From assembly GCF_032191835.1 (NCBI RefSeq), contig NC_083242.1:19344001-19408000 (forward strand): a stretch of DNA of 64,000 bases, given 5' to 3'. Positions 2,351-61,400 of the stretch are shown here, piece by piece. Below the pieces are notes generated by a model that was not told where the DNA came from, made no database searches, and worked only from the letters and a program-made list of their open reading frames with translations. Every line of letters begins with the position of its first letter. The first letter of the stretch is position 1. The position numbers were made by a program, and so were the translations under genes. Source of the stretch: Heteronotia binoei (Eukaryota).

Positions 2351-5300
2351 GTTGGACTGGCTTCTGGGAGACCTATGTTGCATTCACACTACACTCAATA
2401 ATGCGTTTTGAACCCGGATTTTTACTGTGTAAGAATAGCAAAAATACAAATGTAAAATATATTATTTAGTGTAGTGTGAATGCTCCACCAGAGCCGAATC
2501 CCCACCTTTACATAGATTACCTGGGGCCAGTCATGCACCCTCCGCCTCACCACAGAGATAACAGGGAGGAGAGGGGGGATGCCAGCCTCCAAGTGGGACC
2601 TGGGGATCCCCTGGAACAGGGGCGGCTGAACTTGCTTAACATAAGAGCCACATGGAATAAATGTCAAACTCTTGAGAGCCACAAGGAAGGAAGGAAGGAA
2701 AGAAAATCCTCTAAGCTTGCTGGGCGACCTTGGGCCAGTCACTTTATCTCAAGCTAACCTACACTGCAGGATAGTGATTGGGAGAATGAAATGGGGAGGA
2801 GAGGGTGACGCTATCCACGGAGTTCCACAGAGAAGGAAAGCAGAGTACAAAGACCTAAAATAGAAATTTAAAAGTTACTTCAAAGAATCTTGCAGCAAGA
2901 ACCCAGCAGTATGATAGTGGGTAACATTTCAGTCCGGGGTCCATTTTCATGCAGAATTCTCCATTTCTGCAAGTTTTAAGTCATTGGCTTGAATCCAGCA
3001 GTCTTTTATCCTTCCTCTCTTTAAGTGACTCTTCCTCCAGTTGAAATTGGAGGAGGACTCCTTAAATTGGAGGAAGACTTAGAACCTGAGTCAAGGTGGG
3101 ATATATTATATAGCAGGGGTGGCCAGACTTCCTTAATTTAAGAGCCACATGGAATAAATGTCAGATGTTTGTGAGCCACAAGACAGGAAGAAAGAAAGAT
3201 GGATGGGGAGGGGGAAAGAAAGCAACTTCAAATGCATTTTCCGAGCTATCAGCTGGTTTGGCTTTAAGAAGTGATTTAAAGAGACAGATGCCTTCTGCAA
3301 GCCAGCTGATGGGGCGGTGGGGGCTTCAAGAGCCACACAATATGTATGAAAGAGCCACATGTGGCTCCCAAGCCACAGCTTGGCCACCCCTGCCCTGGAA
3401 TTACAGCTCATCTCCAGTCCAGACTACAGAGATCAGTTCCCCTGGAGAAAAATAACTGCTTTTGCAGACAAGCTCTATGGCACTGTGCTTCGCTGAGGTC
3501 CCTGTCCTCCCCAGGCTCCAGCCCCAGATCTCCAGCAGTTTCTCTCAAGTTTTCCTTGCTGTTTGTCATGGAACAAGGGGACTAGGGAGGGCTAGAGCTG
3601 CCAGTCAACAGTTTGGCCTCAGCAGCAGGTGCCCATCAACACCTTAGGCAAAAGTGGAGCTGCAACAGCTGGGAGGGTTGAGGAGAGGGATGGAAACGAT
3701 CTGGCAGCCCTACCCACCCATCTTCTGCTGGGGATCAGAGAGGACCCGGCAGCTCTAAAGAAAAGAACAATGTGAGCTGCTTCCAGGGAGAAAGACAGGG
3801 AGTAAATGAAATGTGTATGTAAAGTGCTAGCAAGTCGCAGCTTATGGTGACCCCAGCAAGGGGTTTTCAAGGCTAGTGAGAAGCGGAGTTGTTTTGCCCT
3901 TTGCTTTCCTCTGCAAAATCTCCCTTGGTGCAGGTCTCCCATCCAAGTACCGACCTTGCTTCGCTTCCAAGACCAGCCTGTACCATGCCACCTTCCTTCC
4001 CAATAAGTGAAATAAATATTTGTCCTGTTTTTTGAAGTAGTCGTAATTAGTGTTCCCTCTAAGCTGCAGAGTCTTGTGAGCAAAAATTTTTCTTTGTGAG
4101 CTACTGCATAAATTAGCTGCTCTGTGTGAGCTGGAGGCTAAGAATCTGTGAGCTAGCTCACACTAACTCAGCTTAGAGGGAATACTGGTCATAATGTAAT
4201 CTTTTATTCAACACCATTTCTCTCAAAATTTCCTTGCTGCTTGTTGTAAAATAAGGCGACTGGAGTTGCCAGTCAACTGCTTGGCCTCAGTAGCATGCGC
4301 CCATCAATTCCTTACGCAGAAGTGTAGCTGCAACAACCAGAAGGGTGGGGGAGAGGAATGGAAGCAAACAAGAAAGAAGCTTGCTTTGGTTACCGTTCGA
4401 ATAGCTGGATCCTCATGTCCTCTCTTTAGCACAGGCAAGGTGGTTAGGTGAAAGTTTGCAGCCCCCATCTGTTTTCAATACTCTGCAGTTTCCTTAAACG
4501 GCAGCAGTTATTACAACCACACATGGTGAAAGATTAGAATTAAGTTCTTTTGAGTGCTAATCTGGTGGAAAGGTGGGTTATGCATTTATTTTTAAAGTAG
4601 CATAGCTTGAAATTGAGTACCCATTGGCAAAGCTGAGCTGTCCTGTTCCCTGAAATGTTACAGCCAGCATTTGAGCATTGATGCTGAACACAAGCGCAAC
4701 ACTTAGAGATTTTAAAAAAGGCTTCCCTCCCCCTAATTTAAAAAAGCACAATTTTGGCCTAGGCAATTTTGGCCTTGGCCTAACTGATTTCCCCTCCTTG
4801 CAGCTAACAGTTCTAAGATCTGGTGACACTGGTAATGACCTACAAAAGTGTATGCTCTGTAAAGTCAACATAAGCTTGTGGTGAAATCCTAAACAGTTAC
4901 AACTTTCTAAACACACTGAAGAAGAAAGTCAGTGCAACTGTTCAGGATTACACAGACAAAGTACATCTGGTTTTTCTTACTTTTTTCTACTTTATACTTC
5001 TGCTATTTTCTGCTTATATAGCAGTGCTCCTCTGGTCTTCCATCCCTGGATCGATCAGATCAATTTCAGTATCATTACTATGGAATCTGTGGTCTGAGGT
5101 TCTTCTTTGCCACTACTGGGCCTGTTAATTTCTTGATACTGACCTGCGTGTCACTCATGCTGTCACAAAGCTGGATGAATTCTGAAGGGATTTATGTACC
5201 CAATAGGACTATAAAAATCTAGCAATCTTCATCTGTTTATTATTGCAGATCACCTTTTAAAATCAGCTTCTGTCATAACAAACCATGATAGAAATCTCAT

Positions 5301-18558: not shown

Positions 18559-19087
18559 CAAGGGTGGCCAAACTTTGACTCGGGAGCCACGTGTGGCTCT
18601 TGAAGCCCCCACTGCCCCGTTGGCTGGCTTGGAGAAGGTGTTTGTCTCTAAATCACTTCTCCAAGCCAAGCCAGCTGGCAGCTTGGAGAATGCATTTAAA
18701 GTTGCTTTCTTTTTGCCTTCCCCCCTCTTCCAGCTTTTTGCCTGCCTGCCTGCCTACCTTCCTCTTGTGGCTCTCATATACCTGATGTTCATGTCTGGTG
18801 GCTCTCATACATCTGACATTTATTTTATGTGACTCTTACATTAAGCAGGCTGGGAGGGACAGTAACTCAGTGGTAGAGCATCTGTTTGGTAAGCAGAAGG
18901 TCCCAGGTTCAGTCCCCAGCATCTCCAACTAAAAAGGGTCCAGGCAAGTAGGTGTGAAAAACCTCAGTTTGAGACCCTGGAGAGCCATTGCCAGTCTGAG
19001 TAGACAATACTGACTTTGATGGATCGAGGGTCTGATTCAGTATAAGGCAGCTTCATAGGTTCATATGTTCAAGTTTGGCCACCCTTG
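18559..19087 (-). mobile_element. Same hAT family, with a tRNA-SINE inserted near one TIR
   Basis: Perfect TSD ATCTAACA at 18551-18558 and 19088-19095. Confidence 0.85.
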
Positions 19088-19200
19088 ATCTAACAGGTGA
19101 TGGCTCTCCAGACATAGAATCATATAGAATCATAAGAGTTGGAAAGGGCCATGTGGGCCATCTAGTCCAACCCCTTCCTCGATGCAGGATCAGCCTAGAG

Positions 19201-34200: not shown

Positions 34201-37200
34201 GAATGAGATAGTTCAGGTGGAAGAAAGCTAGTGTTTCCAGCCTCCATGCAGGGCCTAATTATCTCCCGCTATTCCAACTGATCTCTGGACAATAGAGATC
34301 CGTTCTCCTGGAGAAAAACACTAGGGTGAACTGTATGGCATTGTATCCTGCTAAGGTGCCTCCAGTCCTCAAGCCCGCCCCCCCTCCCCAGGCTCTACTC
34401 TTTAAATTTCCAGGTATTTCTCAACATAGAGCTGCAGAGTTACTAAGTCTAACTCAGAAAATATCTGAGGGCTTTGCGGGTAGACCCAGGAGGCTTTTAC
34501 ATTCCCTTAAATAAATTAGAATACAGCAGTGCAGTTCCCCTGAATACAGTCTTCATTTCTTCATCCCCCAGCAGCTGCATATCCCACCCCCCTCTCTCTT
34601 ACACACACACACAGAACAGCCAAAACACTTTTGTGATTTTATTGGAGCAATTTACTCATAGAATTGTTGAATGTAACCATCTGTTGTATATTCAATCAAG
34701 TTCTTCAGAGTAACACAGAGCAACCAAAGGTTCTAGTTTACTCTTTACTCTCTATTTTACTGTGCAAACAGCTTCTGAAAGGAACAATCCTCTGTTTGTT
34801 GTGCTGGTTTCCTCTTCCTTTCTAGCAGTTCACTGGGAGCAGCCATGTTGTTCTGCTGACTTACCCTGCCCCCATTCAGCCTTACTCCTACAGATTTAAA
34901 GGCACACACACACCTTCTAAAAAGCAAGCAGTTTCTAGCCTTCTGGCGTGGAAAGGCACGTGGTGACTGTTGGGGCAGGGCTTCCCCCCTCCCGGCCAGA
35001 TGACTGGGGGTGGGAAGGAGCCTGCAAAACCAGGGGATCCCCCACTGGGAACTGGGGATTGCGAAGCCTATTGACCTGGCAAATTTAGTCCTGGAGGAAC
35101 CCTGGACCCATTTAGTTATAAGCAACCCAGAAGGAGGCCGAATGAAAGGAGAACAAGATTGATTTTCTATGGCCAGAGTCTCCAGGAAGGAGAAAGTCTA
35201 ACAGTCCCAATTTATGCCTTGTGTAGTCCTGCACATTTTCCCACATTGGTGGATGGCTGTGGTAAAACCCCTTGGAAAAGCAGACCTGTCTTTACCTTTT
35301 TGCTTCATATCCTGGTGGAGTAGACTTGCCAATCCCCAGGTCCCAGCGGGGGTTCTTCCACTTTCCCAGGCTCCTTCCCGCCCCCAGTCAGCTGGCCAGC
35401 GGGGGGAAGCCCCGCCCCCAGAGTACCATGTGCCTTTCCAGCCCCGGAGGCTTCAGTCTCTACTTGAGAAAGGCTTCCTCTTGGGATGGTGTGTCTGTGT
35501 TACTTTGAAGAAGTTGGCAGCAACTTGTAAGTAGAGATGCCAATCCCTTGTTTCAGAGTCGCCAGAAATGGAGGGAAACATCTGCTGAGCACTTCATTAT
35601 TCCCTATGTGGAGATTGATTCTCATAGGGTATAATGGGGAATTGATCTGGAGGTTTCGGGGGCTCTGGGGGAGCTGTTTTTTAGTTAGCGGCACCAAATT
35701 TTCAATATAGCATCTAGTGCCTCTCCCCAAAGTACCCCCCAAGTATCAAAACGATTGGACTAGGGGGTCCAATTCTATGAGCCCCAAAAGAAGGTGCCCC
35801 TATTCTTCATTATTTCCTGTGGAAGGAAGGCATTAAAAAAGGTGTGCTGTCCCTTTAAATGTGATGGCCAGAACTCCACCCCCAAAGTCCCCAGATATTT
35901 CTTGAATTGGATTTGGCAACCCTACACCACACTGACCCAAGCAGAGTTACTGTAGTTTATTTATTTCAGAAGCCTTAGATCTCAGAGATGCTGCATAGAA
36001 TTGCACTGTTACCTGAAATACTTTTATCTCACTTTTCTCTTTGAAAAGGTTTCAAGGCCTCACCCTACTCCTGCATTAATTCTCTGCAGGAGAGCTGGTG
36101 GTGTGACTCAACTAGTGGTCCAGAGCTGGAGTGAGTCAGCGTCAGAGCCCTTGGGCCAGTCTCCAACTCTTAGCCTGTCCTACCTCACCAGGCAAACCCC
36201 TATTTTTGTAAGGTGTTGTAAGGTGGGGGTAAAATGGGGGATGCCATTCTGAGCTCCTTGGAGGAACAGTGAGATAAACTTGTCAGTAGATAGATTTAGT
36301 TACCACACCAAGATCCGGTGTGGAAGATACTGGGCCTGCCATGATGCCTTTTCCTTTTCAGTGCTGGAGCCACAGGTGTCCTGTTGAACATCGATCGGGT
36401 CGCAGAACTCTTAGCGGAGCTCAAAGCAGAAGCTCTTCAAGTCCAGGGACTTGTCGACTCCGGCTGGTTCCTGATCGGCACCAAGCGGCCGAGACCACCA
36501 GGATGTTCAGATCCTTTGACTTGCTCTCCAGCAGATGCTCTCAAGAAAGGGCTCCGGTACACCTTGACCTGCTGACCTGGCAGTGGGGCTCCCTCCCACA
36601 CATAAGATAGGGGGGATTATGGGTGTTGACAGGGCTGGCCCTAGGGTGCATGGTGCCCCAGGCAGTCTCGCTGCCCACCGCCCCTGTGCTGTGCCCTGCA
36701 ACTTGCCCTGCCCCTTTCCATGGTGGCACCTCCTCCTCCCTCCCTTACAATTTTAATGCCCAGGAATGAGCGGTGAAGCGCCACGCTCCCAGGGCTCTTT
36801 AAAGGCCGCCCCCTCCCTCTGCTGATCAGCTGATCAGTGGGTAAAGTGGCTTTTTCAGTGGCTCGCTCGTCCTTCCTGCCACTGCTGCTCCAGCGCTGAT
36901 TGTCCTGAGCGCACCAGAAGGCCGGCATAGGAACTGCCAGCCTCCGTGACACTTAGCTCATCGGCAGGGGGAGGGGCAGCCTTTAAAGAGCCCCAGGAGC
37001 TTCACCACCCATTTCCGGGCATTAAAATTGTGAGGGGGGGGGGAGCAAATAGGGATTTGCCTAGGGGCCGGGGAGGGGTTGAGGGCCGATTTCGGCACCT
37101 CCGTCCTGCCAGCACCCTAAACAAATGCCTAGTTTGCCTAGTGGGTGGGCCGGCCCTGGGTGTTGATGCAACTGGAGAACACTCCACTGCCTAAGGGTGC

Positions 37201-40200
37201 ACTCACACTACACTAAACAGTGCATTTTGCAAGTGGGTTTTTGCTATTCTTACACAGTAAAAAAAAAAATCCAGTTGCAAAATGGATTATTTAGTGTTGT
37301 GTGAATGCTTGGGATTCCATTCTCTGTTATGTCCAACCGAGCGCCCATGTAACGCCCAACAGCTTTGGGGCCCCTGTGAGATGGGAGCTCCAGACATCCT
37401 CCAGAAAATGGCCCCACGCAAAGCAAGATCAAAAGATCTCCCATGTGACAAATGCCAAGGTTATGTGTTCCTTCTCTCCCCTCTAGAATGTGGAACGGAC
37501 TCCTTCCAGAGAAATGCAAGCAGCAATTCAAACGGGGCGAGGAGTGGCAATGCTTCCTGGGACATAAGCTGTATTCATCCCTGAAAAGTAAGGCAGGTCA
37601 CACTCACAGACTGAACTGCAGGGCCTCCTTCCCACAGTGATATCAGTAGCAGCTTTACCCAAGCGGCTATTGTTCTTCCTGTGAGCCTGGTTGGTATAGG
37701 GTTGCCTGCAACCAGGTACCAGCTGATTTTCCAACACCCAGTCCAAATCCTCACTCTTCCCCCCTGGCATTTTAACACTGTTGGATTGTTTAACACCTTT
37801 TAAATTCCTTATCTGATCTTTCCCTACTGCTGGGTTTATTCTGTGCTGTCAACTTATACTTGATGCTCCTTCTCTTCTGTTTAGGGTTGCCAATCCCCAG
37901 GTGGGGGCAGGGTATCCCCCAGTTTGGAGGCCCCCCCCCACTTCAGAGTCATCGGAAAGTGGGGGGAGGGGAGGGAAATGTCTGCTGGGCATTATTCCCT
38001 ATGGAGATTTATTCCCATAGGAAATAATGGAGAATTGATCCGCGGATATCTAGGGCTCTGTTTTTTGAGGTAGAGGCACCAAATCTTTGGCATAGTATCT
38101 AGTGCCTCGCCCCAAAATACCCCCCCAAGTTTCAAAAAGATTCAACCAGGGGGTCCAATTCTGTGAGCCCCAAAAGAAGATGCCCCTATCCTTCATTATT
38201 TCCTATGGGTGGAAGGCATTTAAAAAGGTGTGCAGTCCTTTTCAATATGGTGGCCAGAACTCCCTTTGGAGTTCAATTATGCTTGTCACACCCTTGCTCC
38301 AGGATCCACCCCCAAATCTTGAGCTGAACTTGGCAACCCTACTTCTGTTAGACCAACCAGTCCTGATTTGGCACGCATGGGGGACATGGCACCTGCTATC
38401 GTGTTTCCCTCCTGATACCCGTGCTTTCTGGGGCTAAAATCTAAAGCAGGATCGTCGAAGTAATTTGTTGTGAGGGCCGGATCTGACATAAATCGGGGAG
38501 GGACGGTGGCTCAGTGGTAGAGCATCTGCTTGGTAAGCAGAAGGTCCCAGGTTCAATCCCTGGCATCTCCAAAAAAGGGTCCAGGCAAATAGGTGTGAAA
38601 AGCCTCAGCTTGAGACCCTGGAGAGCCGCTGCCAGTCTGAGAAGACAATACTGACTTTGATGGACCAAAGGTCTGATTCAGTATAAGGCAGCTTCATAAG
38701 TTCATAAATGAGAACTGGGCTGGGCCATGGGTGTCATAAAACGTAATGCCAGGTAGAGGAGATAAAAGAAAAAGTCTGCAGATTTATACCCCGCCCTTCT
38801 CTCTGAATCAGAGATTCAGAGCAGCTTACAATCTTCTATATCTTCTCCCCTCACAACAGACACCCTGTGAGGTGGGTGGGGCTGAGAGGGCTCTCATAGC
38901 AGCTGCCCTTTCAAGGACAGCTGTACGAGAGCTATGGCTGACCCAAGGCCATTCCAGCAGCTGCAAGTGGAGGAGTGGGGAATCAAACCTGGCTCTCCCA
39001 GATAAGAGCCTGCACACTTAACCACTTTACCAAACTGGCTTTATAAACTTTATGAAGGACACAGACAAACACAATTCAAGATTTTTAAAAAACTTAAAAC
39101 ATGCTTAAAAGGTTAGCATTCTTACAATATTTTGTTTGTTCAATCTCTGGTAACTATCTCTTGCTCTGAATGATTGCATCAAAATCTGGAGACAACATTC
39201 ATGTTGTTCAGACGTTGTTCAGGTATATTTGTGTAAGTTATAAACCTACTTTTGATTTATTGGCATTCATTGCAGAAATCTCATGGTCAATGCTTTGAGC
39301 CTAAGACCCAGGGGAAAACATGAAATGGCTGGGCATTGTGAGCTTTTGTACACAAGTTGCTTCATGTACTGGTCAGCCAATGGAGAAAATAGAGGCTTTG
39401 CTCTGTAGCTCCTGTGCAACTGAGCAAGCCTAGCAAAGCAAGCTGTGATGCAGAAGGAGGCAAGAGAGAGAGAAGGAAGCAGATGACTGTGAGTTGCTTG
39501 GGGGCCACTCTGACCCTCAGGCAGCATGTTTGACAGCTCTGACCTAAAGAGTCCTGAATGGGGCAGTGTCCTGGGATTTCTTGGACACGCTGAGTCACCT
39601 TAAAGCTTGAATCTGGAAAGAATCACACCCCAAACCAGAGACTCTTTAACAGAAAAACAATATATTTTTATGCTCACTGGTCCAAGAGAAGCAGGCTCAA
39701 GGACCCTGATTTGCATTTACACAATAAATTAATAGAAATAAGAAAGGATCTTTGTTACAACTTTCAACCTAGACCTTTTGGCAGGAAAACATATGATTGG
39801 TTAATAACCTGGTGGTCTCTGCTGTTGCTTAGGCATGTGGCATTTCGTTCCCCGCAGTTAATGAACTAGTTCAGACCTGTTTAACTGCACGTGTTGCTGT
39901 CTATCACAGACAGGTGAATCTCAGGCCAGATCTCATTCATGTTTTGATTTTAGAAACTTTAATTTTAACAGCAGGGGGAGAAAGGATGATTCAGTTCAGA
40001 CCCTACCTACCAGCTGACTGATGAGCAGGGGTGGAATTCTAGCAAGAGCTCCTTTGCATATTAGGCCACACACCCCTGATGTAGCCAATCCTCCAAGAGC
40101 TTACAAAAAATAGCCTTGTAATCACTTGGAGGATTGGCTACATCAGGGAGGTGTGGCCTCAGGGCTTTTTTTTTTTGTAATAGCAGGAAAGCACAGGAAC

Positions 40201-51625: not shown

Positions 51626-54600
51626 CGCAAATAGCAGCGGGGCCCAAGGTGATAATTAAAGCGATTTCCAAAGCATGTGTGAAAATGTCTGTCTGTTGTG
51701 AGGGATGAGACGGATAGTTTTAGAGCTTTATATGGACATACTGGAGGGGGGGGGAAGAGTCTACAGGATAACATTGTCATTATTTATGACGTGCAGCCCT
51801 GGCTGGAAGGCACAAGATACGTCCATGCGGAACCTGAAGACATAAAGCTGCCGTACAGCAAGGCAGACCGTTGGATCTCTCCTGAAATTAGTATTATCTG
51901 CTCTGACTCTCAGTGGCTGCCCAGGGGTTTAGACAGAGGAGGATTTTTTTCTCAGCACTTGCCAACTGAGATACTCTGATGTCAAGATCTACAGGGCTTT
52001 TTTTCTTTTATGTGTTGCAGGAACTCCTTTACATATTAGGCCACACACCCCAATGTGGCCAGTCCTCCAAGAGCTTACAGGGCTTTTATTGCAGGGCCTA
52101 CTGTAAGCCCTTGGAATATTGGCTGCATCGGGGTGTGTGGCCTAATATGCAAAGGAGTTCCTGAGACAAAAAAAAAAGCCCTGGTATCCCACAAAGGTAC
52201 TCTGCTGGTCCACTCGTTGCAAGGGTCGTGGTGACTAGAGGGGCAGCCTCAAGAGATGTTGAGTGTGCGCAAAGCCCGGGGAGTTCTCAGGCAGGTAACA
52301 GACCTCTGTCCAAAGACAGAAACACACCGTTTGGAAAACTGTTAGCCTGTGAAGAACGGAACCAAAGCTTAAACTGCTGTCCAGCTGATGAAATTTTAGT
52401 TGATTACCTGATGAGTTAAATTATTAATCAATTCAGTAAAACCAAGGCTTTTTGGGTAGAAAAAGCCCAGCAGAGACTCATTTGCCTATTAGGCCACACC
52501 TCCTGACATCACCATTGTTCCACAGTGCTTTTTTTGTAGAAAAAGGCCAGCAGGAATTCATTTGCATATTAGGCCACATCCTTGACATCACCGTTGTGTT
52601 TTGTAGAAACACAGCAGGAACTCATTTGCATTTCGGGCCACACCCCTGACACCAAGCCAGCCGGAACTGCGTTCCTGTGGGTTCCTCCTCAAAAAAAGCC
52701 CTGAGTAAAACTGCACATGAATACACACTTGCTCTGAAGAGGAACACTTTCTGTTGCCAGGTCCCACGCACAGAATCACAGAGTTGGAAGGGACCTCCAG
52801 GGCCATCTAGTCCTACCCCATCACAACAGAAGAGGCATCACTGTAGAAGAGACTTCCTCCCGTGAGGGGCAGGAGAAAGCTTCTCAAAAGGTGTTTGCGA
52901 TCCGTAACCTGACAGAACTTCTGTATGTATGTAAAGCACTGTCAAGCCCCAGCTGACGAGGTACCCTGACAGAGTTTTCAAGGCAAGAGACTATGGAGGT
53001 GGTTTGCCATTTGCCTGTATCTGCCCAGCAATCCTGGTCTTTCTTGGTGGTCTCCCATCCAAATACTAGCCAGGACCGACCCTGCTTAGCTTCTGAGATC
53101 TGACAAGATCAGGCTAGCGTGGGCTGTCCAGGCCAGGGCCTAAAATACTTAATCAGGGTTGTCGAATTCATTTGTTATGAGGGCCGGATCTTCATCTTGT
53201 TGGGATGGGCCATGTGTGTCATAAAATGTAATGCCAGGCAAGGGAGATATAAACGTTATAAAGAATACAGACATACACACTCAGCCTAATCTACCTCACT
53301 GGTTTGTTGAGCCTCAACAAAAGAAAGAGAAGCTTAGCTTAGTAGCTCTGCGATTGAGAGAGCCTGGCAAAGGTAGCTCTCCTTCCCACACTTTCTCCTC
53401 AAGGGAGGAACTTTGCTCTGTAGCTCCTGTGCAATTGAGCAAGCCTGTCAAAGCAAGTTCTGATGCAGAAGGAAGCAAGAGAGGAAGAAGGAAGTCAAGC
53501 GGGGGAGGAATAGTTTGCTTTGCCAACTATTTTCTCCATTGGCTGAGGCTCCTCCCTTGGGAAGGAAGGGGGGAGGAATAGTTTCACTTCTCAGCCTTTT
53601 GGCTAAGATCAAGTGTAGTTTGCTTTCCCAGGCTCTCTCAACACACAGCAGAGATGCTGAGTCAAGCCTCTCTTCCTTCTATCGGCTAAGGCTCCTCCCC
53701 CTTCTGGAACTCTCAAAACAGGAATTGAAGGAGAAACACATGGGTGCCCCTCATGAACCTTTAATAAACATTTTTAGTGAATTTTGTTTCTACAAGGAGG
53801 TTCCAGAACCGCATTCTGCTGCATTCTCCATTGTTGGTCCTTGGGTGGTACCAACAATGAGATGTTGCATACTAGGGTTGCCAGCTCTGGTGGGGAATTC
53901 CTGGAGATTTTGGGGGTGGCGCCTGGGAATGGTGGGGTTTGAGGGAGAAGAGGGGTCTCAGCCATAGAGTCCACCCTCCAAAGCATCCATTTTCTCCAGG
54001 GGACTTGATTTCTGTAGTCTGGAAATCAGCTATAATTATAGGATATCTCCAGGTCCCACCCTATTGTTCTGGCATGTTGTAACCCTATTCTTGGGAGGGG
54101 GCTTCTATTGACTGTTCAATCCATTAATTGCAAGGCCGCTGCTTTTTTCCCCAAGCCCTACTACATATTTGGTGAGGGCATTGGTGAGGAACCTGATTCA
54201 CTGCCGGCTTTTATATTCTCATCAAGACAGTTGTCTTTTTTTGCTCCTTTTCCCAGACCAGTTTTCTTGTGTCTTTGAAATCTGTTTTGTGCCTGACGCA
54301 ATCTAATTATACCTGCACAGTCTTCATCTGCAGGCTTCAGGCTTTCCTCTGAATCATTTGATCCATTCCTCTTCAGGTTTTTGGGGAATCTGAGAACATG
54401 TTCAGTGCTTTGTGACATGTTGGCCTATCCTAATAATAAAAAGTGTCACACTGCTGTGGCGCCTAGGCTATGGTTGCATTTGTTAACTGCATATTATGAG
54501 GGACTAGTTAACCCAGACGTCCAGGATAAGAAATTTGCACGTACTTAAAGGTGCTCTGATTCCCCGCTCCCCACAGAATTTGAGTGTCAGACAGAAGCAG

Positions 54601-54731
54601 ACTGGAAATGAAAGTGGGGCTATGCCAAGCTGAGAGGCTGTGGGGCCAAACTTGCTTAACATAAAAGGCACACAAAATAGAAGCCAGATGTTTGAGAACT
54701 GCAAGACATGAATGTCAGATGTTTAAGAACA

Positions 54732-54797
54732 GGAAGGAAGGAAGGAAGGAAGGAAGGAAGGAAGGAAGGAAGGAAGGAAGGAAGGAAGGAAGGAAGG
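54732..54797 (+). repeat. (GGAA)n microsatellite expanded inside a hAT element
   Basis: About 16 uninterrupted GGAA units. Confidence 0.95.
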
Positions 54798-55829
54798 AAG
54801 GAAGGAAGGAAGGAAGGACAAATAGATGGAGAGGGAGAGAAGAGAAAGGCAGAAAGAAAGCAACTTTAACTTTAAATGCATTCTTCAAGTCCTCAGGTGA
54901 TTTGACTTGGAGAAGTGATTTAAAGAGAGAAATGCCTTCTCCAAGCCAGCCAACTACATATTTGAGAAATCCTGAAGGGATGCTTCAGGGCAGGGGTGGC
55001 CAAACAGGACAATTGATATATCTGGCACCCAGTAGCCTCTGGCTAAGTTGCTACTCAGGCACTGGCCCACCAATAAATTTCCCTGGGTGTCAAATGCCCA
55101 ATGCCACCCCCCTTGTTTGTGACGTGAAACCCAGGTCACCCAAAGCCTGAATCAGCAGTTAAGTAGACCCAGGCGGGCAGCTGTGTTGGTCTGAAGCAGG
55201 AGTGGCCACACTTGCTTAACATAAGAGCAACATAGACCAGATGTCAGATGTTTGAAAGTCGCAAGGAAGGAAGGATGGAAGATAGGGGAGGGAGGAGGTA
55301 GAAAGAAAACAACTTTAAATGCATTCTCCAAGCCGTTGGAGAAGCGATTTAAAGAGACAAATGAGTTCTCCAAGCCAGCCAATGGGTTGGCGGAGGTCTC
55401 AAGAGCCACACAATATGTGTGAAAGAACCACATGCCGCTCCTGAGCCACAGTTTGGCCACCCTGGCTTGAAGCAAGTTAGACTCCAGCAGCACCTTTAAG
55501 ACCAACAAAGTTAAATTATGGGGACAGCTTTCGTGTGCAAGCAAACGTCTTTCGATAGAAGTGTTTTAAACAGGAAGATGTTGGTTCTTGGTGGAAAAGA
55601 ACAAACAGGCAAATTAACTAAAACCCATTGCAACTTTTTAATTTAAATGCAGGGGCTTGCTTCCTATGGGGGGAGGGGAAAGAGCTAAAATCAAGTGCAA
55701 TTTTACCCCTGATTGACTGACTTCCTTTCCCACGTTGCTCTCCCCCCTTTCCCTCCCACCCAGTATGGAAAGGCCTCTGAGCCAGTTCCCCAAACGTTCC
55801 TCCCCTCCTTCTCCCATGCCGGGCTCTGG

Positions 55830-57700
55830 CATTTCCTCTGAGCTCACAGAGCGAGGGAGTGGGGCGGGCTCCTGCCTTCCTCCCCCCGCCCTGCTCGGAA
55901 GGGGAAGGAAGAAGCTGGGCTTGAACTTCGAAGTAACTGCCGGGGGTAGGAAGGCGCCTCCGAGGGGGGCCGGGCGAGCCCGCCTTGGGGGCGCAGCTGG
56001 AGGAGCGCGGCGAGGGGGGCGGCGCGCTAGCCTGTCCCGGGCCGGGGTGGGAGGAGAAGCGGGCAGGAAGGTGCCGCCCTCCGTCCAGCAGAAGAATCCC
56101 AAGCAAGGCGGGGAAATCGCACCGGCTTTGGGGAGAGGCCCGAGGAGGGACAGCGGGACAACCAGGAGCGGCTCCAGAAGGAGGCGAAGAGATCCCGGCC
56201 GGCGGCGGGAGGCTGGAAAGTAGGGCCCGGTCTTCCCCCGGCCTCCCTCGCTTTGGCAGAGAATGGGCTGAACAGAGATTTCCCTCCAGCCGTTTTTTGG
56301 CGACGGGACGGAGCGCGAAAACTTGGTGCCGGGCTGCTTCCTCCGATGCGCTCTCGGCACGCTCAGAGACCCGCTGGCCCCCCCGCGGGGCCATAGGCGC
56401 GCTCGCACTAAGACAGTTTGTACGTGGATTTTTTTCCATAGTAAAATTTTCCAATTTTTTCCATAGTAAAATCTAATCGCGAATGGCATTGAAAAGGATT
56501 GTTGAGTGTGCATGAGCGCATTCCATAGGCGCGTTGACACTAAGACTGCTTGTCGGTGGATTTTTCCATTTAACTTAGTAAAATCTAATAGAAAAACTGC
56601 ATGAAAACCGGATTATATCGTGAATGTGTGTGTGAACGCGCTCCATGACCGCCTACCGCCTCAACCTGCGCGTCTTCTGGCCGCTGGTGACCTGCGGCTG
56701 CACGGCGCTGCTGGGCCTCTGGCCGGCGCTGAGGATTAAGGCTGGCGCGGCCTGGGATGGCGCCCCCGCGGCGCTGCTGCGTGGCGCACTGCTGGCGCTG
56801 GTGCTGCTGGCCTGCTTGGCGCTGCGCTGCCGCCCTCCCCGTCGCCGCAGCCCGCCGAGCCCGCAACAGGAGAGCCCCGTGGGGGAGCCCCGGGCCGGGC
56901 AGGAGCCTCGCCGCCGCCGCCGGGCCCTGCTGGAGGACTTCTACGAGCGCCAACTGCGCCTCTCGCCCCACGTGCTGGGCCACAGCAAAGCGCACGTCAG
57001 CCTGGTGGTTGGAGAGCTGGTGCGCGCCGGCAAGGCGGCCGGCCGGCTGGCCCTGCGCGGGGACTTCGTGCAAGTGGGCAGCGCCTACGAGCAACACAAG
57101 GTGCGCAGCCCCGACGCCTTCGACGTGCTGGTGCCCCTGCGCCTGCCGCCCGGCCTGGCTGTGCGGGTGGAGCCGCGCTCGGCTGGCAGGCGGGGGGCCT
57201 TCGTGTGCGCCCTGCAGGTGGCGGCGCCTGGCGGGCTGAGCGAGGCGCTGTGCGTCGAGGAAGAGGGGGGCGGGCGCCACCTGTCTGCCGCCCTGCTGCT
57301 GCGCTGGTTCCAAGGCCACGTGCAGCGCTGCCTGGGCCCCGTGCGCTCCCGCCTGCAAGAGCGCGTCCGGGTCACCCTGGCCGTCGGGCCCGGGCGCCCC
57401 CTGGCTCTGCACGTCGTGCCGCGCTCCGACTACGTCTGCTGCCACCTCTCGCTGACCGTCCGCCTCGTCCCGGCTGTCCCCTTTGGAGAGACCCTCTTCC
57501 TCACCGCCCGGCCTACTTCCCCGGGCAAGCTGCCTGCCTTCTGGACCCTCGACGTGTCCAAGCTGGAGCAGCGCCTGCTCGCCTGGCTCAAGGAGCAGAG
57601 CCCCGCCGACTCCTGCCATCTTCGGGGCCTGCAGATCCTCAAGGGCCTACGCGACCTGGGGGGCCGGGATCTGGAACAACCCCTGGCTTCCCAGTGGGGC
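55830..57700. promoter_or_regulatory. CpG island covering the ITPRIPL2 promoter and most of its ORF
   Basis: Very high GC and CpG density, GC-box-like runs. Confidence 0.85.
56391..56642 (+). repeat. Diverged ~120-132-bp tandem duplication directly upstream of the ITPRIPL2 ATG
   Basis: CCATAGGCGCG..CACTAAGAC at 56391 and 56523; shared GGATTTTTCCAT...AGTAAAATCTAAT. Confidence 0.8.
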
Positions 57701-58057
57701 CGCGTCCTCTCCTCCTATGTCCTCAAGACGGCCATCTTTGTCCTCCTCCTGCGGGGACCCTTGGAGGCCTGGGCCGACCAGTTCTTGGTGGAGAGGCTGG
57801 AGGACTTGATCCTCTTCCTGGCCCAGAGCCTGCGGAGGCGCCTCTTGCGGCACGTCTTCCTGGGCAACCCGGCCCTCCCCGAAGCTGTCAGCCTCCCCAA
57901 GTTTGTCAAGGAAGCGGCTCCAGTCAATCTGCTGGCTGACTTTGAGGGGCCCACCTTAGACAAGGTGGCCGCCCATCTCCTGAATACCTGGCAACATGCG
58001 CCTCAAATCATCAGCATGTACAGCGGCCACAGGTACAGGAGGACTCATCCGGTCTGA
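56645..58057 (+). CDS. ITPRIPL2: Inositol 1,4,5-trisphosphate receptor-interacting protein-like 2 (Mab21-domain membrane protein), intronless, 470 aa
   Basis: N-terminus YRLNLRVFWPLVT; LSPHVLGHSKAHVS, RGDFVQVGSAYEQHKVRSPDAFDVLVPLRLPP, QWGRVLSSYVLKT and EAAPVNLLADF all match ITPRIPL2. Single exon downstream of COQ7, as in human. Confidence 0.96.
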   Translation: MTAYRLNLRVFWPLVTCGCTALLGLWPALRIKAGAAWDGAPAALLRGALLALVLLACLALRCRPPRRRSPPSPQQESPVGEPRAGQEPRRRRRALLEDFYERQLRLSPHVLGHSKAHVSLVVGELVRAGKAAGRLALRGDFVQVGSAYEQHKVRSPDAFDVLVPLRLPPGLAVRVEPRSAGRRGAFVCALQVAAPGGLSEALCVEEEGGGRHLSAALLLRWFQGHVQRCLGPVRSRLQERVRVTLAVGPGRPLALHVVPRSDYVCCHLSLTVRLVPAVPFGETLFLTARPTSPGKLPAFWTLDVSKLEQRLLAWLKEQSPADSCHLRGLQILKGLRDLGGRDLEQPLASQWGRVLSSYVLKTAIFVLLLRGPLEAWADQFLVERLEDLILFLAQSLRRRLLRHVFLGNPALPEAVSLPKFVKEAAPVNLLADFEGPTLDKVAAHLLNTWQHAPQIISMYSGHRYRRTHPV

Positions 58058-58460
58058 AACCGTGGCCTGGACTCTTGGGTACAACTGAATAGAAGCCCGT
58101 AGCTTTATTTGAAAGAATAATGTTCATATATAGAAGAGCTCTCACATTCACATAGTTGACCTTCTGTGGGTTTGTTGTACCTGTTCTAATCTGTTCTTAA
58201 TCCTACATAGTTTACATATCAGAAGAGTAGTTTCAAAAATATACTCTTTAGAAGATGAATGCACTTCTTTGGAGCAAGGATTACATGGGAAGAGGCAATC
58301 TTTGTTCTCCCACCCAGGAGGAAATGCTTCTTCCCAGGTGTGATTTGTCATGTGTTGCTTTTGCACTGTTTCCATCCATTTGTGTAAAAGTCAAGAATAG
58401 TTCCAAAGGAAGAAAGAGACATTTGTTTTGCAACTGCAGTAAGCGCAAGAGGCACGCCTT

Positions 58461-58494
<34 letters not shown>

Positions 58495-61400
58495 AGAATG
58501 CCTCTTTTCAGCAGCAGTCCGCCATATTTTTATAAGTTAAAAATGGATTTTTGTGGGAATCCAGTCTCAGGGCATCTTCCTCGTTGATCAGAATGGTTTT
58601 TGTCAATTTATTTCATCCAGTTGATTAACCTGTGGGAAGCTGTGGCCTTAACCATCATAAGTTTGTACCTTCATATGTGCTTTCTGCTTGGATATTTCTT
58701 GTCTGATAAGTGGTCTCATGAAGGTATTATGGAGGAAAGAGCAGGTGACGTAGCCTGCCAGTTGTGGTACAGCTGTTGCGTGTGGCTTTAGCACATTATA
58801 ATTCCTTCCATGTGTCCCCTCCTTACAGCTTGCAACTTCTGCTTTAAGGAATAGAACAATGAGGGAGGAAGAAGTTTAACCCTATCTTCCCCTGCTCTTT
58901 TCTTGCTTGAAAAACCAGTTCTTTTTTATATCCCCCCCTCAGTGGGGTAAAACCAGCTCAGGGGAGGCTTGTCCAGTAAGAAAACTGCAGGGAGGCCTTC
59001 CCTCTCTTCCCCCACCAGTCTAGTCTCCTTGATCAAGCTATCCAGAGGTTGCATATTAAAATAAATCTCAGAAGAAACTTAGAAGGTCTTGAGCCCTTCT
59101 TATCATTCAAACTTGCTTTGGAATGTGGCGATGGTGAGTGTTGTCGCATCCAGTCTATGCAGAGCTAATCTGAATTCCTCACTGGAGCAGTACCCATAAG
59201 GGAGGGGAGCAGGGGTGGAATTCTAGCAGAAGCTCCTTTGCATATTAGGCCACACACCCCTGATGTAGCCAATTCAAGGCTCTTTTTTTGTAAGCTCTTG
59301 GAGGATTGGCTACATCGGGGTGTGTGGCCTAATATGCAAAGGAGCTCCTGCTAGAAGTCCACCCCTGAAGGGGGGGATATTTAGCCCTGCATCTTGATTC
59401 TAATAAATTCTTAGGTTTGTTTGACCAACTGTTAAGAATCAAGGTGGAAATGGCTGCATTATTTACTGCTTATAAGTGGGATTAGGTATGGACCAAAGGA
59501 GGAGTTCCCACCTGTGTCCTTAGGATGTGAAAATATGCCTTTGGGCGTTTAGAGGAAAGGGCAAGCAGGGTCAACCCTGCAGGGGAAATATGGAATTCAT
59601 GTCCCTTCTCCTTGGTGCATCTTCTCAAGACAACTGCCCTTTGTGTCTTCACCAGGAGAGTGGGCATAAAGAGCTGCTTTGAGTATGGTTTCAGAAGAGC
59701 AAAAGGGCGCTTCATCATAAGCACACACAAGGGTTTTGTCTTTCCCTACTCCAGATGTTTGAAGTGGGAGTTAGGCGGTGCACAGAACCCTCCTATGTAT
59801 GTGTTTGTGGCATGTGACTGTGAGCATACTCTCAGCTAAGTCGGAAATAGAGGGAAGGGTGTCCATTATGTGGTTGGGCTTTGAGTCAAGTGTTGTTCCG
59901 ATGCAAAATGGAATACCAGAGTCAAGAAGCAATGTGGTTTTAGTTATGTGTCGGGACAGGAAATGAAAGGAGGGTTTTCCCCCTCCCCGAAGTGGTACAG
60001 AGGAGCAGATTATATTCAGAGGGAAGGTTACCTTGGGGATTTAAGGGCAAGGATGCGTTCAGAGACCAAAAAAAGAAGCACTTTATTTTTGTAAGGACTT
60101 TTCTTGTTTGTTTTGTGCCTAAATGTCTTTCTTTGAAGTATGGAGGATAAGGGTTCTATATATAAGTGAGGGTTTTTTTAATGGAGAGAGTTTGTTTTGA
60201 TCCTGAAAACTCTTACAAAGAACCAAGCCACAAGTGATGCTGGATTATTGGCAGGTGAACCTTCCCAGCATTTGAGACTGCGATCACACACATTAAATAA
60301 TGCATTTTCAATCCACTTTAAATGCACTTTCCAACTGGATTTTGCCAGTTCACACAGTAAAATCCAGTTGGAAAGTGCATTGAAAGTGCATTATTTAGTG
60401 TGTGTGATCGCAGCCTGGGAGCCCCCAGTTCAGATCAAAATAAAAACAGGAGTATGGCAGCATCTTCAAGATTTAAAATTTAAAATAGGCTCTTGTTTTA
60501 TTTTGCTGCTGCCAATTTGGAATTACCAGTTCAAATCATAATCACAATGTGTGTGTGGGGGGGGGGGAGAATTAAGCGAGTGAATTTGCCAGTTGAAAGC
60601 AACTCTCCCCACCCCAAGTATTATTAACTTTGGAAAGAGAAGCACGTGCACGCATACAAACCAAAGTTTGAGTTCAGCGCCCCATTTAAGACCAACAAAA
60701 TTTAATTCTGGGTAGAAGCTTTTTTGAGCATGCTGGCCTTACAGGTGCCACTGGACTCAAACTTTGTTTTCTTGCTTCAGACCACCTGAATCTACTTGCA
60801 CAAAAAGACAAGCAAGTTCCTTTGCCTGTGTTTGTTCCTTTCCGCAGCTTATAATATAGGTACGTATGTTGAGGGGTTGGTTTCGATTTGCAAAACTGGA
60901 TGTTTCAAGGGAAGGAAAAGGTTAAAACCACAAAGGGAAAACAAAAAAGACAAGCCTTCAAAACAAGATGTTATAAAGGGTCAGATGTGTTCAGAGACTG
61001 GGACTGCCCTCTCCTGTTGTTTTATTTGAAAGTTTTAAATCCACAACTCAGATCTGATTTAGGTGGGTGCTATTTCTCTGTTGAAAAACAGAGAACTGGA
61101 GAGATCTTTTCATGGCTCTCTCAGGGTCATGTTGTAGCTTCCCCTTGAAAAGGGTTCAGTCAAGGCTAAAACAGTATTTTGCTTTAAACAGCTGCCTTGA
61201 TAAAAGCTAACTTTCCAATTCATAATTCTAAGGAAGAATCCAGTTCAGCAAGAAGACTTCCATAGTGTTTTGTGTAGCTAGTAATAAACTTGTGTTGCTC
61301 ACCCTGTGTGTTTCCCAAACCTCAGTCAAACTTCACCAGACCTTGGCTTTTTTAAAGTCAACAGGAGTTTAATTTGTCCTTCATGCTGCAAAAGATGGAA

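What the first reader, a model, noticed from the sequence alone, without database searches (positions are those of the whole stretch)
56483..56648. Three uORFs chained to each other and to the ITPRIPL2 start by ATGA stop/start overlaps
Seen: uORF1 56483-56515 (MALKRIVECA*) ends in a TGA overlapping the ATG of uORF2. uORF2 56512-56604 (30 aa) ends in a TGA overlapping the ATG of uORF3. uORF3 56601-56648 (15 aa) ends in a TGA overlapping the main ATG at 56645. Each junction is ATGA with a -1 shift, so the chain cycles through all three frames and returns to the frame of uORF1. A separate 3-codon uORF lies at 56624-56635. Known: ATGA overlaps mediate termination-reinitiation coupling in bacteria and some RNA viruses; uORFs usually repress eukaryotic translation. 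Inference: this may be a relay-type translational control of ITPRIPL2, or a chance product of the local duplication.
Basis: partly seen in the sequence, partly recalled or inferred. Interest (0 to 1): 0.7.

Follow-up and report, generated by a model that had tools for sequence, protein, structure and literature searches.

The report
Transposon-born uORF chain before ITPRIPL2
The three tiny reading frames linked by ATGA in front of the gecko ITPRIPL2 gene are real and transcribed. They sit inside a small transposon that landed on the start codon in this lineage only, so the chain is most likely an accident that dampens translation, not an evolved relay.

Summary
A 3-codon uORF lies at 56624-56635.

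The whole chain lies in a 254-nt AT-rich block (56391-56644). The block is two diverged tandem copies (85% identity) of a palindromic MITE-like element, which has further copies in the window. It interrupts a CpG-island leader exactly at the start codon (ccAT|...|ccATGacc). It is absent from the orthologous leader of three other geckos and four other squamates.

RNA-library contigs from another individual (about 2% divergent) run colinearly from 56140 through the chain into the CDS, with all three junctions intact. The chain is therefore in the mRNA and is not spliced out.

A chain of 3 or more has P of about 0.0017 per ATGA start in dinucleotide shuffles. Another one occurs by chance elsewhere in this window, so several per genome are expected.

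There is no TURBS motif, no unusual RNA structure, and no conservation beyond this lineage.

Verdict: these are transposon-derived uORFs, probably plain repressors bypassed by leaky scanning and ordinary reinitiation. A relay is unsupported (about 7%).

More durable are two ancestral leader uORFs, MG* and MxSxxAQR, which are conserved across squamates.

The parts
56140..56644 (+). Minimum transcribed 5' leader of ITPRIPL2 (at least 505 nt). Its true 5' end lies between about 55730 and 56140.
   Evidence: contigs of RNA run X1 tile 56140-56376 and 56378-56682, then the CDS and 3'UTR as far as 59900. The X7 contig covers 56143-56327. Depth is zero on the unique upstream stretches 55537-56109, 54964-55154 and 54200-54390, and 0.54 on 54391-54581. 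No joints were reported in the leader.
56263..56271 (+). Ancestral mini-uORF ATGGGCTGA (MG*) in a strong Kozak context (A at -3, G at +4).
   Evidence: the sequence is identical in Elgaria, Pogona, Tiliqua and the turtle Emydura. Candoia has ATGGGTTGA.
56346..56396 (+). Ancestral conserved uORF0 (MRSRHAQRPAGPPAGP*). Its TAG is the ccATAG at the left edge of the insertion.
   Evidence: the motif M-x-S-x-x-A-Q-R is present in 7 of 8 squamates. In Eublepharis the same uORF ends ccATGA on the main ATG.
56391..56522 (+). MITE-like unit 1, including the flanking CCAT. It contains a perfect internal 18-nt repeat at 25-nt spacing (56430-56447 and 56455-56472).
56523..56644 (+). MITE-like unit 2, with terminal inverted repeat GCGCGTTGACAC / GTGTGAACGCGC (56529-56540 and 56630-56641).
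   Evidence: (inverted repeat I1, 92% complementary).
56483..56515 (+). uORF1, 10 codons, G at -3 and G at +4. It lies in unit 1.
56512..56604 (+). uORF2, 30 codons, weak context (T at -3, A at +4). It spans the junction between unit 1 and unit 2.
56601..56648 (+). uORF3, 15 codons, weak context. Its ATGA arose from the family's GCATTGAAA by loss of one T. Its stop overlaps the main ATG.
56624..56635 (+). 3-codon uORF (MCV*). Its TGA is the inverted-repeat GTGTGA of unit 2.
56645..58057 (+). ITPRIPL2 CDS, 470 aa, single exon. The context of its ATG is now cTCCATGA (T at -3), where other geckos have gGCCATGA.
   Evidence: The only other Met is residue 458, so this ATG is the only usable start.
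60276..60412 (.). Better-preserved copy of the same palindromic element family (hairpin -85 kcal/mol).
   Evidence: A profile built from units 1 and 2 alone finds it at E = 6.7e-5.
37195..37310 (.). Further copy of the family.
   Evidence: E = 4.6e-9 with the three-copy profile; E = 0.036 with the profile of units 1 and 2 only; hairpin -49 kcal/mol.
2379..2487 (.). Further, weaker copy of the family.
   Evidence: E = 1.2e-4; hairpin -41 kcal/mol.

Best explanation
A short palindromic non-autonomous DNA transposon (MITE-like) inserted into the ITPRIPL2 leader of this gecko lineage exactly at the start codon. CCAT is repeated at each edge, so the ATG was regenerated on the 3' side. The element, with its flank, is now present as two diverged tandem units. 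Point changes and small indels in this AT-rich DNA created three AUGs, and the stop for each frame is supplied by the TGA that overlaps the next AUG. Of these junctions, only the TGA of the main ATGAcc start is ancestral; the TGA at the uORF1/uORF2 junction belongs to the inverted-repeat end GTGTGA of unit 1. The three-link ATGA chain is therefore an incidental by-product of the insertion. Shown: the insertion, its absence in relatives, the repeat family, transcription through the block, and the chance rate. Inferred: in the mRNA the new uAUGs act as ordinary uORFs that lower ITPRIPL2 translation. uORF1 (good context) captures many scanning ribosomes. After its 10 codons, 40S subunits resume scanning, mostly pass the overlapping weak-context AUG of uORF2, and reach the main AUG by leaky scanning past the weak uORF3 AUG and by downstream reinitiation. 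Ribosomes that do translate uORF3 end 1 nt past the main AUG and are largely lost to the main ORF. No stop-start coupling is needed to explain this.
For: The block is AT-rich (37% GC) inside a 65-79% GC island. It consists of two units with inverted-repeat ends. Related hairpin copies lie at 60276-60412, 37195-37310 and 2379-2487. The alignment with three geckos shows a clean gap of about 250 nt between ...ggggccat and ccatgaccgcc. The block is also absent in Elgaria, Pogona, Tiliqua and Candoia. One 305-nt RNA-library contig covers 56378-56682 colinearly. The five differences the tool listed for that contig (56462, 56509, 56521, 56577, 56650) leave all junctions intact (my reading of the codons). 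Chain >=3 has P = 0.0015-0.0018, and a second chance instance occurs in the window. No TGGGA is present in the leader. The fold z-score is -1.2. No Rfam family reaches its gathering score. The reviews say that reinitiation after short uORFs occurs downstream and improves with distance, whereas overlap coupling needs TURBS-like signals and yields 3-20%. TE-derived uORFs that change translation are documented.
Against: P of about 0.002 per site is still small. The two units are 15% diverged, so the block may be old and has been tolerated in a gene whose only usable start is 56645. The chain is intact in a second individual that is 2% divergent. However, with only 12 junction bases out of 254, five neutral changes would miss them about 78% of the time (my arithmetic). 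In other squamates the ancestral uORF0 repeatedly ends in ATGA on an AUG (Eublepharis, Elgaria, Tiliqua), which hints that stop-start overlap at this gene may not be wholly neutral. No translation data exist.
Confidence: 0.72

Rival explanations
1. True termination-reinitiation relay. Ribosomes ending uORF1 restart at the overlapping AUG of uORF2, then at uORF3, then at the main AUG. The chain thereby hands ribosomes across the 250-nt insertion to a main AUG that now has a poor context.
For: There are three consecutive ATGA junctions ending on the main AUG, with P of about 0.002. The main AUG lost its -3 purine through the insertion, so scanning-dependent recognition is weak. uORF1 is short and has a good context. 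The chain is intact in a second individual. Before the insertion, uORF0 probably ended ATGA on the main AUG, as it does in Eublepharis.
Against: Known eukaryotic overlap coupling needs a TURBS or similar element and still gives only 3-20% per junction. Three junctions in series would pass well under 1% (my arithmetic). UGGGA is absent and the structure is not unusual. After short uORFs, reinitiation is at downstream AUGs and rises with distance. The chain is not conserved outside this lineage. The junctions sit in transposon DNA at non-homologous positions.
Confidence: 0.07
2. ATF4-like delayed reinitiation switch created by the insertion. uORF1 is a permissive first uORF and uORF3 (overlapping the main start) is the inhibitory last uORF. 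When eIF2 ternary complex is low, 40S subunits bypass uORF3 and start at the main AUG.
For: The layout resembles ATF4: a short first uORF in good context, followed 86 nt later by a uORF that overlaps the main start out of frame. The leader already carries two conserved uORFs, so the gene is probably translationally regulated.
Against: The uORF3 AUG and the main AUG are only 44 nt apart, and another AUG lies between them at 56624, so discrimination by rescanning time would be poor. The uORF3 AUG has a weak context. There is no conservation and there are no data.
Confidence: 0.08
3. The chain is largely irrelevant because most translated ITPRIPL2 mRNAs start inside or downstream of the block (an alternative TSS), so the uORFs are seldom scanned.
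For: Logan contigs cannot show transcript starts or isoform proportions (tool caveat). AT-rich transposon DNA inside a CpG island could carry initiator-like sequences.
Against: The RNA contig spans 56378-56682 without a break, and contigs from two libraries reach 56140 and 56143. The conserved uORF0 and MG* upstream argue that the ancestral TSS lies upstream of 56263.
Confidence: 0.1

Closest known systems
TE-derived uORFs in 5' leaders (for example TE-mediated uORFs that change translation of orthologs in Gossypium, PMC11912738)
   Same: A lineage-specific transposon insertion in the leader supplies new upstream AUGs. The expected effect is reduced or altered translation relative to orthologs.
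   Different: Here the element landed on the start codon itself and regenerated it. It is tandemly doubled, and its uORFs happen to be linked by ATGA. No translation data exist for this case.
TURBS-dependent termination-reinitiation of caliciviruses and influenza B (AUGA / UAAUG overlaps; PMC10275272, PMC5972666)
   Same: The stop and start share nucleotides (AUGA), with a -1 frame shift.
   Different: The viral cases follow long ORFs, have a single junction, need a UGGGA-containing structured element 40-90 nt upstream, and are conserved. Here the ORFs are 10-30 codons, there are three junctions, there is no UGGGA, there is no significant structure, and the feature is lineage-specific.
GCN4 / ATF4 multi-uORF delayed reinitiation
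   Same: Several short uORFs are present, and the last one overlaps the main start out of frame.
   Different: The spacings do not suit a rescanning-time switch. The last overlap is 4 nt rather than tens of codons. The chain is not conserved.
Bacterial translational coupling at ATGA overlaps
   Same: The tetranucleotide and the frame arithmetic are the same.
   Different: That is a different translation system (70S ribosomes, Shine-Dalgarno dependence, operons) and does not carry over to a capped vertebrate mRNA.

Membership tests
MITE (miniature inverted-repeat DNA transposon) | Short, non-coding element with terminal inverted repeats | tested here: met
   The units are about 120-130 nt. Unit 2 has 12-nt arms that are 92% complementary. 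The family copies fold as near-perfect hairpins of -41 to -85 kcal/mol. The ITPRIPL2 units are degraded (-30 kcal/mol).
MITE (miniature inverted-repeat DNA transposon) | Multiple dispersed copies in the genome | tested here: met
   There are five copies in this 64-kb window. A profile of the two ITPRIPL2 units alone finds 60338-60411 at E = 6.7e-5 and 37196-37304 at E = 0.036. The genome-wide copy number was not measurable.
MITE (miniature inverted-repeat DNA transposon) | Target-site duplication of defined length | tested here: inconclusive
   CCAT (CCATAG / CCATAG / CCATGA) flanks both units. The other three copies show no clear TSD, so the superfamily is undetermined.
MITE (miniature inverted-repeat DNA transposon) | Empty site at the orthologous locus of relatives | tested here: met
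   L001, Eublepharis and Sphaerodactylus run ...ggccATGAcc without the block. Elgaria, Pogona, Tiliqua and Candoia do likewise.
TURBS-type termination-reinitiation | Stop and restart codons overlapping or within about 20 nt | tested here: met
   There are three ATGA overlaps.
TURBS-type termination-reinitiation | UGGGA motif 1 in a structured element 40-90 nt upstream of the stop | tested here: not met
   There is no TGGGA anywhere in 56140-56660. The fold z-score is -1.2.
TURBS-type termination-reinitiation | Demonstrated dependence of downstream ORF translation on upstream termination | not testable with these tools
   This needs reporters or Ribo-seq.
Regulatory multi-uORF leader (GCN4/ATF4 kind) | uORFs lie in the transcribed leader | tested here: met
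   RNA-library contigs cover 56140-56682 colinearly, with the caveat that contigs do not show the TSS.
Regulatory multi-uORF leader (GCN4/ATF4 kind) | Conservation of the uORF arrangement among orthologs | tested here: not met
   The chain is absent from all eight other sauropsid leaders compared: L001, Eublepharis, Sphaerodactylus, Elgaria, Pogona, Tiliqua, Candoia and Emydura. The alligator leader could not be aligned. Only uORF0 and MG*, which lie upstream of the chain, are conserved.
Conserved-peptide uORF (applies to uORF0 at 56346-56396, not to the chain) | Peptide motif conserved across distant orthologs with synonymous variation | tested here: met
   M-[RHP]-S-x-x-A-Q-R is present in 7 of 8 squamates, with third positions varying TCT/TCG/TCC, GCT/GCC and AGA/AGG. 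The sample is small and no formal dN/dS was computed.

The most novel reading that the evidence does not exclude
The insertion split an ancestral stop-start overlap (uORF0 ...ccAUGA main) by 250 nt. The three ATGA-linked uORFs were then retained because they relay post-termination ribosomes across the transposon to a main AUG that now has a poor context. This would be a cellular, TURBS-independent, multi-step termination-reinitiation relay in a vertebrate mRNA.
Probability: 0.06. Interest if true: 0.75.

Novelty: new member of a known kind. Interest (0 to 1): 0.25.

Why it matters
As a relay, it would be the first serial stop-start coupling described in a vertebrate cellular mRNA, but the evidence points away from that. 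What remains is a tidy natural example of a transposon landing on a start codon, regenerating it, and loading a conserved, already uORF-regulated leader with four extra upstream AUGs. Comparing gecko species with and without the insertion would measure how much TE-born uORFs cost a gene. The squamate-wide uORF0 (MxSxxAQR) and the MG* mini-uORF are better candidates for real translational control of ITPRIPL2. No paper in the searched library mentions both ITPRIPL2 and uORFs.

Tried and rejected
- Tandem Repeats Finder did not report the 132-nt duplication, because the units are too diverged and carry indels. It was found with the repeat finder and blastn instead.
- I considered that the block might be a duplicated piece of the CDS start, since CCATAGGCGCG resembles CCATGACCGCC (7 of 11 bases). 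I rejected this because both units align to dispersed hairpin copies elsewhere in the window.
- Identifying the TSD and the transposon superfamily was inconclusive.
- RNA structure of the block: z = -1.2, not unusual.
- Rfam: nothing above gathering score.
- TURBS motif search: none.
- Literature search for ITPRIPL2 plus uORF: 0 papers.
- The search of earlier findings by sequence and by several word sets came back blank.
- The alligator leader is not alignable to the squamate leader motifs.
- Organism B (run X3) gave no contig on the leader, so no sister-lineage test of the junctions was possible.
- The species name could not be verified. The tools gave only the assembly accession GCA_032191835.1; by nearest proteins it is a gecko.
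- Mammalian hits were not fetched or compared. The N runs at 32174-32407 and 32754-32893 were left untouched.

Full report
**1. The observation**

Reading the window and translating by script confirms every coordinate.
- uORF1, 56483-56515, reads MALKRIVECA*.
- uORF2, 56512-56604, has 30 codons.
- uORF3, 56601-56648, reads MKTGLYRECVCERAP*.
- A 3-codon uORF (MCV*) lies at 56624-56635.
- The main ORF runs 56645-58057 (470 aa).

Each junction is ATGA. The return to the starting frame after three -1 shifts is simple arithmetic.

The main ORF is ITPRIPL2. It has weak Mab-21 and Mab-21_C hits. Named orthologs are 72-74% identical in the geckos Eublepharis and Euleptes, 70% in Sphaerodactylus, and lower in other reptiles and birds. 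The window genome is therefore a gecko (assembly GCA_032191835.1; I could not verify the species name with the tools). The protein's only other Met is residue 458, so 56645 is the only usable start.

**2. What the chain sits in**

The leader lies in a CpG island of 65-79% GC, but 56400-56599 drops to 37% GC.

This AT-rich block (56391-56644) consists of two tandem units with 132-nt spacing. They are 84% identical over a 43-nt gap-free stretch and 85% over 110 aligned columns, with several indels. Unit 1 carries a perfect internal 18-nt repeat at 25-nt spacing.

Each unit is bounded by inverted repeats. For unit 2 these are GCGCGTTGACAC / GTGTGAACGCGC.

Related but better-preserved palindromic copies lie elsewhere in the window.
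- 60276-60412: hairpin of -85 kcal/mol.
- 37195-37310: -49 kcal/mol.
- 2379-2487: -41 kcal/mol.

A profile built only from the two ITPRIPL2 units recovers the 60.3-kb copy at E = 6.7e-5 and the 37.2-kb copy at E = 0.036.

The block is therefore two old, degraded copies of a MITE-like fold-back element. It is not duplicated leader sequence.

**3. It is a lineage-specific insertion at the start codon**

I fetched the orthologous loci by exact protein look-up.

In the closest available gecko (L001, 80% protein identity), in Eublepharis and in Sphaerodactylus, the leader runs from a conserved uORF straight into ..ggccATGAccgcc. The alignment shows a clean gap of about 250 nt opposite the block. 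Elgaria, Pogona, Tiliqua and Candoia also lack it.

In the window the left edge reads ..gcggggCCAT|aggcgcg and the right edge reads ..acgcgctCCAT|GAccgcc. The two units are also separated by CCAT. The element therefore landed inside the ATG region, and the repeated CCAT regenerated the start on the 3' side.

Whether CCAT is a true target-site duplication, and how long that duplication is, could not be settled. The other copies show no clear TSD.

One side effect is that the -3 base of the main ATG changed from G (gGCCATGA in other geckos) to T (cTCCATGA).

**4. The junctions are not copies of each other**

I aligned the two units and compared the junction positions.
- The ATG of uORF1 (56483) has no counterpart in unit 2.
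- The ATGA at 56601 corresponds to GCATTGAAA in unit 1 and in the 60.3-kb copy, so it arose by loss of one T.
- The TGA at 56513-56515 corresponds to the TGA at 56633-56635. That is the GTGTGA of the inverted-repeat end, which in unit 2 terminates the 3-codon uORF.
- The last junction uses the ancestral ATGAcc (Met-Thr) of the gene, which is present in 8 of the 9 orthologous starts examined besides the window.

**5. Is it in the mRNA?**

I had one run search and one read-laying run. All the runs served were Logan contigs, which cannot show transcript ends or expression levels.

In RNA library X1 (organism A, a different sample), contigs tile the following intervals:
- 56140-56376
- 56378-56682, a single 305-nt contig across the whole block and into the CDS, with no gaps
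- 56837-57168
- 57173-57763
- 57765-58454
- 58502-59237
- 59341-59900

The unique upstream stretches 55537-56109, 54964-55154 and 54200-54390 have zero depth in that run, and 54391-54581 has 0.54.

A second library (X7) has a contig at 56143-56327. No joints fall in the leader.

The library holds only 132 million letters, so genomic DNA carry-over cannot plausibly give depth 7-14 over 3.7 kb while giving none just upstream (inference).

The chain is therefore transcribed and not spliced out. The 5' end lies at or upstream of about 56140, which makes the leader at least 505 nt.

The X1 contig differs from the window at six positions, five of which the tool listed: 56462, 56509, 56521, 56577 and 56650. 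Read against the frames, 56509 gives Cys>Trp in uORF1, 56521 gives Phe>Leu in uORF2, 56577 is synonymous in uORF2, and 56650 is synonymous in the CDS. None of them touches a junction. This is weak evidence for constraint, because the junctions are only 12 of 254 bases.

**6. Chance**

I shuffled the leader 10,000 times, preserving dinucleotide content and keeping the main ATGA fixed.
- A chain of 1 or more appears in 28% of shuffles.
- A chain of 2 or more appears in 2.5%.
- A chain of 3 or more appears in 0.15-0.18%.

Empirically, 2 of the 407 ATGA sites on both strands of the window have a chain of 3. The second is an unrelated minus-strand site (19152>19123>19064>19056).

If roughly a quarter of about 20,000 genes start with ATGA (my assumption), on the order of ten such chains per genome are expected.

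Other first-stage notes on this genome already list single and double ATGA overlaps at PTGER3 and HOXA7 (unchecked). That fits the high base rate.

**7. Mechanism**

Two reviews set out the relevant principles.
- PMC10275272: coupling at overlapping AUGA or UAAUG is known after long viral ORFs. It needs a TURBS element and yields 3-20%. After short uORFs the restart codon is always downstream.
- PMC5972666: TURBS motif 1 has a UGGGA core. After short uORFs, reinitiation efficiency rises with distance.

Applied to this leader:
- No TGGGA is present in 56140-56660.
- The block's RNA fold is not unusual (-67 kcal/mol, z = -1.2).
- No Rfam family reaches its gathering score.

The Kozak contexts are as follows.

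| AUG position | uORF | -3 / +4 | Context |
|---|---|---|---|
| 56263 | MG* | A / G | strong |
| 56346 | uORF0 | C / C | weak |
| 56483 | uORF1 | G / G | good |
| 56512 | uORF2 | T / A | weak |
| 56601 | uORF3 | T / A | weak |
| 56624 | MCV* | G / T | moderate |
| 56645 | main ORF | T / A | weak |

The most economical reading is ordinary multi-uORF repression, and this is inference.
- Many ribosomes translate MG* and uORF1 and then resume scanning.
- They skip the overlapping uORF2 AUG because they have not yet regained a ternary complex.
- They reach the main AUG 130 nt later, by leaking past the weak uORF3 AUG and the 56624 AUG.
- Ribosomes that do start at uORF3 terminate 1 nt past the main AUG and are mostly lost to the main ORF.

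A serial relay with three junctions at viral-like efficiencies would deliver well under 1% of ribosomes (my arithmetic).

**8. What is conserved instead**

The leader upstream of the insertion carries two ancestral uORFs.

MG* mini-uORF:
- ATGGGCTGA is identical in the window (56263), Elgaria, Pogona, Tiliqua and the turtle Emydura.
- Candoia has ATGGGTTGA.

uORF0 (56346-56396):
- It has the peptide motif M-[RHP]-S-x-x-A-Q-R in 7 of 8 squamates.
- Third codon positions vary synonymously.
- Its stop overlaps an AUG as ATGA in three species: the main AUG in Eublepharis, an in-frame upstream AUG in Elgaria, and in Tiliqua a 7-codon uORF that itself ends ATGA on the main AUG.
- In the window it ends at the ccATAG of the left insertion edge, exactly where ccATGA stood before the insertion.

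With a 28% base rate for a single overlap this recurrence is not significant. It is, however, the one observation that keeps a coupling idea alive.

**9. Verdict**

The relay interpretation is not supported. The "chance" alternative is essentially right, but the cause is a transposon insertion and its doubling.

This is a new instance of a known kind, TE-derived uORFs (for example PMC11912738). It has an unusual placement on the start codon.

- Interest: 0.25.
- The relay reading keeps about 6-7% probability and would be interesting (0.75) if shown.

Noticed in passing
window 56346-56396; L001:404-448; L002:2945-3004; L003:2956-2997; L005:1942-2004; L006:1899-1958; L007:1431-1484; L008:1416-1493: A uORF with the peptide motif M-[RHP]-S-x-x-A-Q-R is conserved in the ITPRIPL2 leader of 7 of 8 squamates, with synonymous third-position variation. 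It is a candidate conserved-peptide uORF. No paper in the searched library links ITPRIPL2 and uORFs.
   Followed up: partly
window 56263-56271; L005:1829-1837; L006:1762-1770; L007:1355-1363; L008:1350-1358; L009:1478-1486: The two-codon mini-uORF ATGGGCTGA (MG*) is identical in this gecko, Elgaria, Pogona, Tiliqua and the turtle Emydura (ATGGGTTGA in Candoia). It is lost in Eublepharis, Sphaerodactylus and L001. In the window it has a strong Kozak context.
   Followed up: partly
L007:1431-1504 (Tiliqua) and L005:1942-2027 (Elgaria): In Tiliqua, uORF0 ends ATGA on a 7-codon uORF (MKGAEAA*), which in turn ends ATGA on the main ATG. This is a two-link chain that arose independently of any transposon. 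In Elgaria the homologous ATGAAGG is in frame with the CDS and is annotated as the start.
   Followed up: partly
window 60276-60412, 37195-37310, 2379-2487: These are dispersed copies of a fold-back MITE family of about 110-135 nt with ends GCAnTCACAC...GTGTGAnTGC. The hairpins are near-perfect (-41 to -85 kcal/mol). The superfamily and TSD are undetermined.
   Followed up: partly
window 54582-54963, 55155-55536, 59166-59547: Contig depth is very high (thousands to more than 100,000) in all four runs, RNA and DNA alike, with many joints. These are abundant interspersed repeats flanking ITPRIPL2.
   Followed up: no
window 19056-19154, minus strand: This is a second three-link ATGA chain (19152>19123>19064>19056) in sequence with no known start codon. 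I used it only as an empirical control for chance.
   Followed up: no
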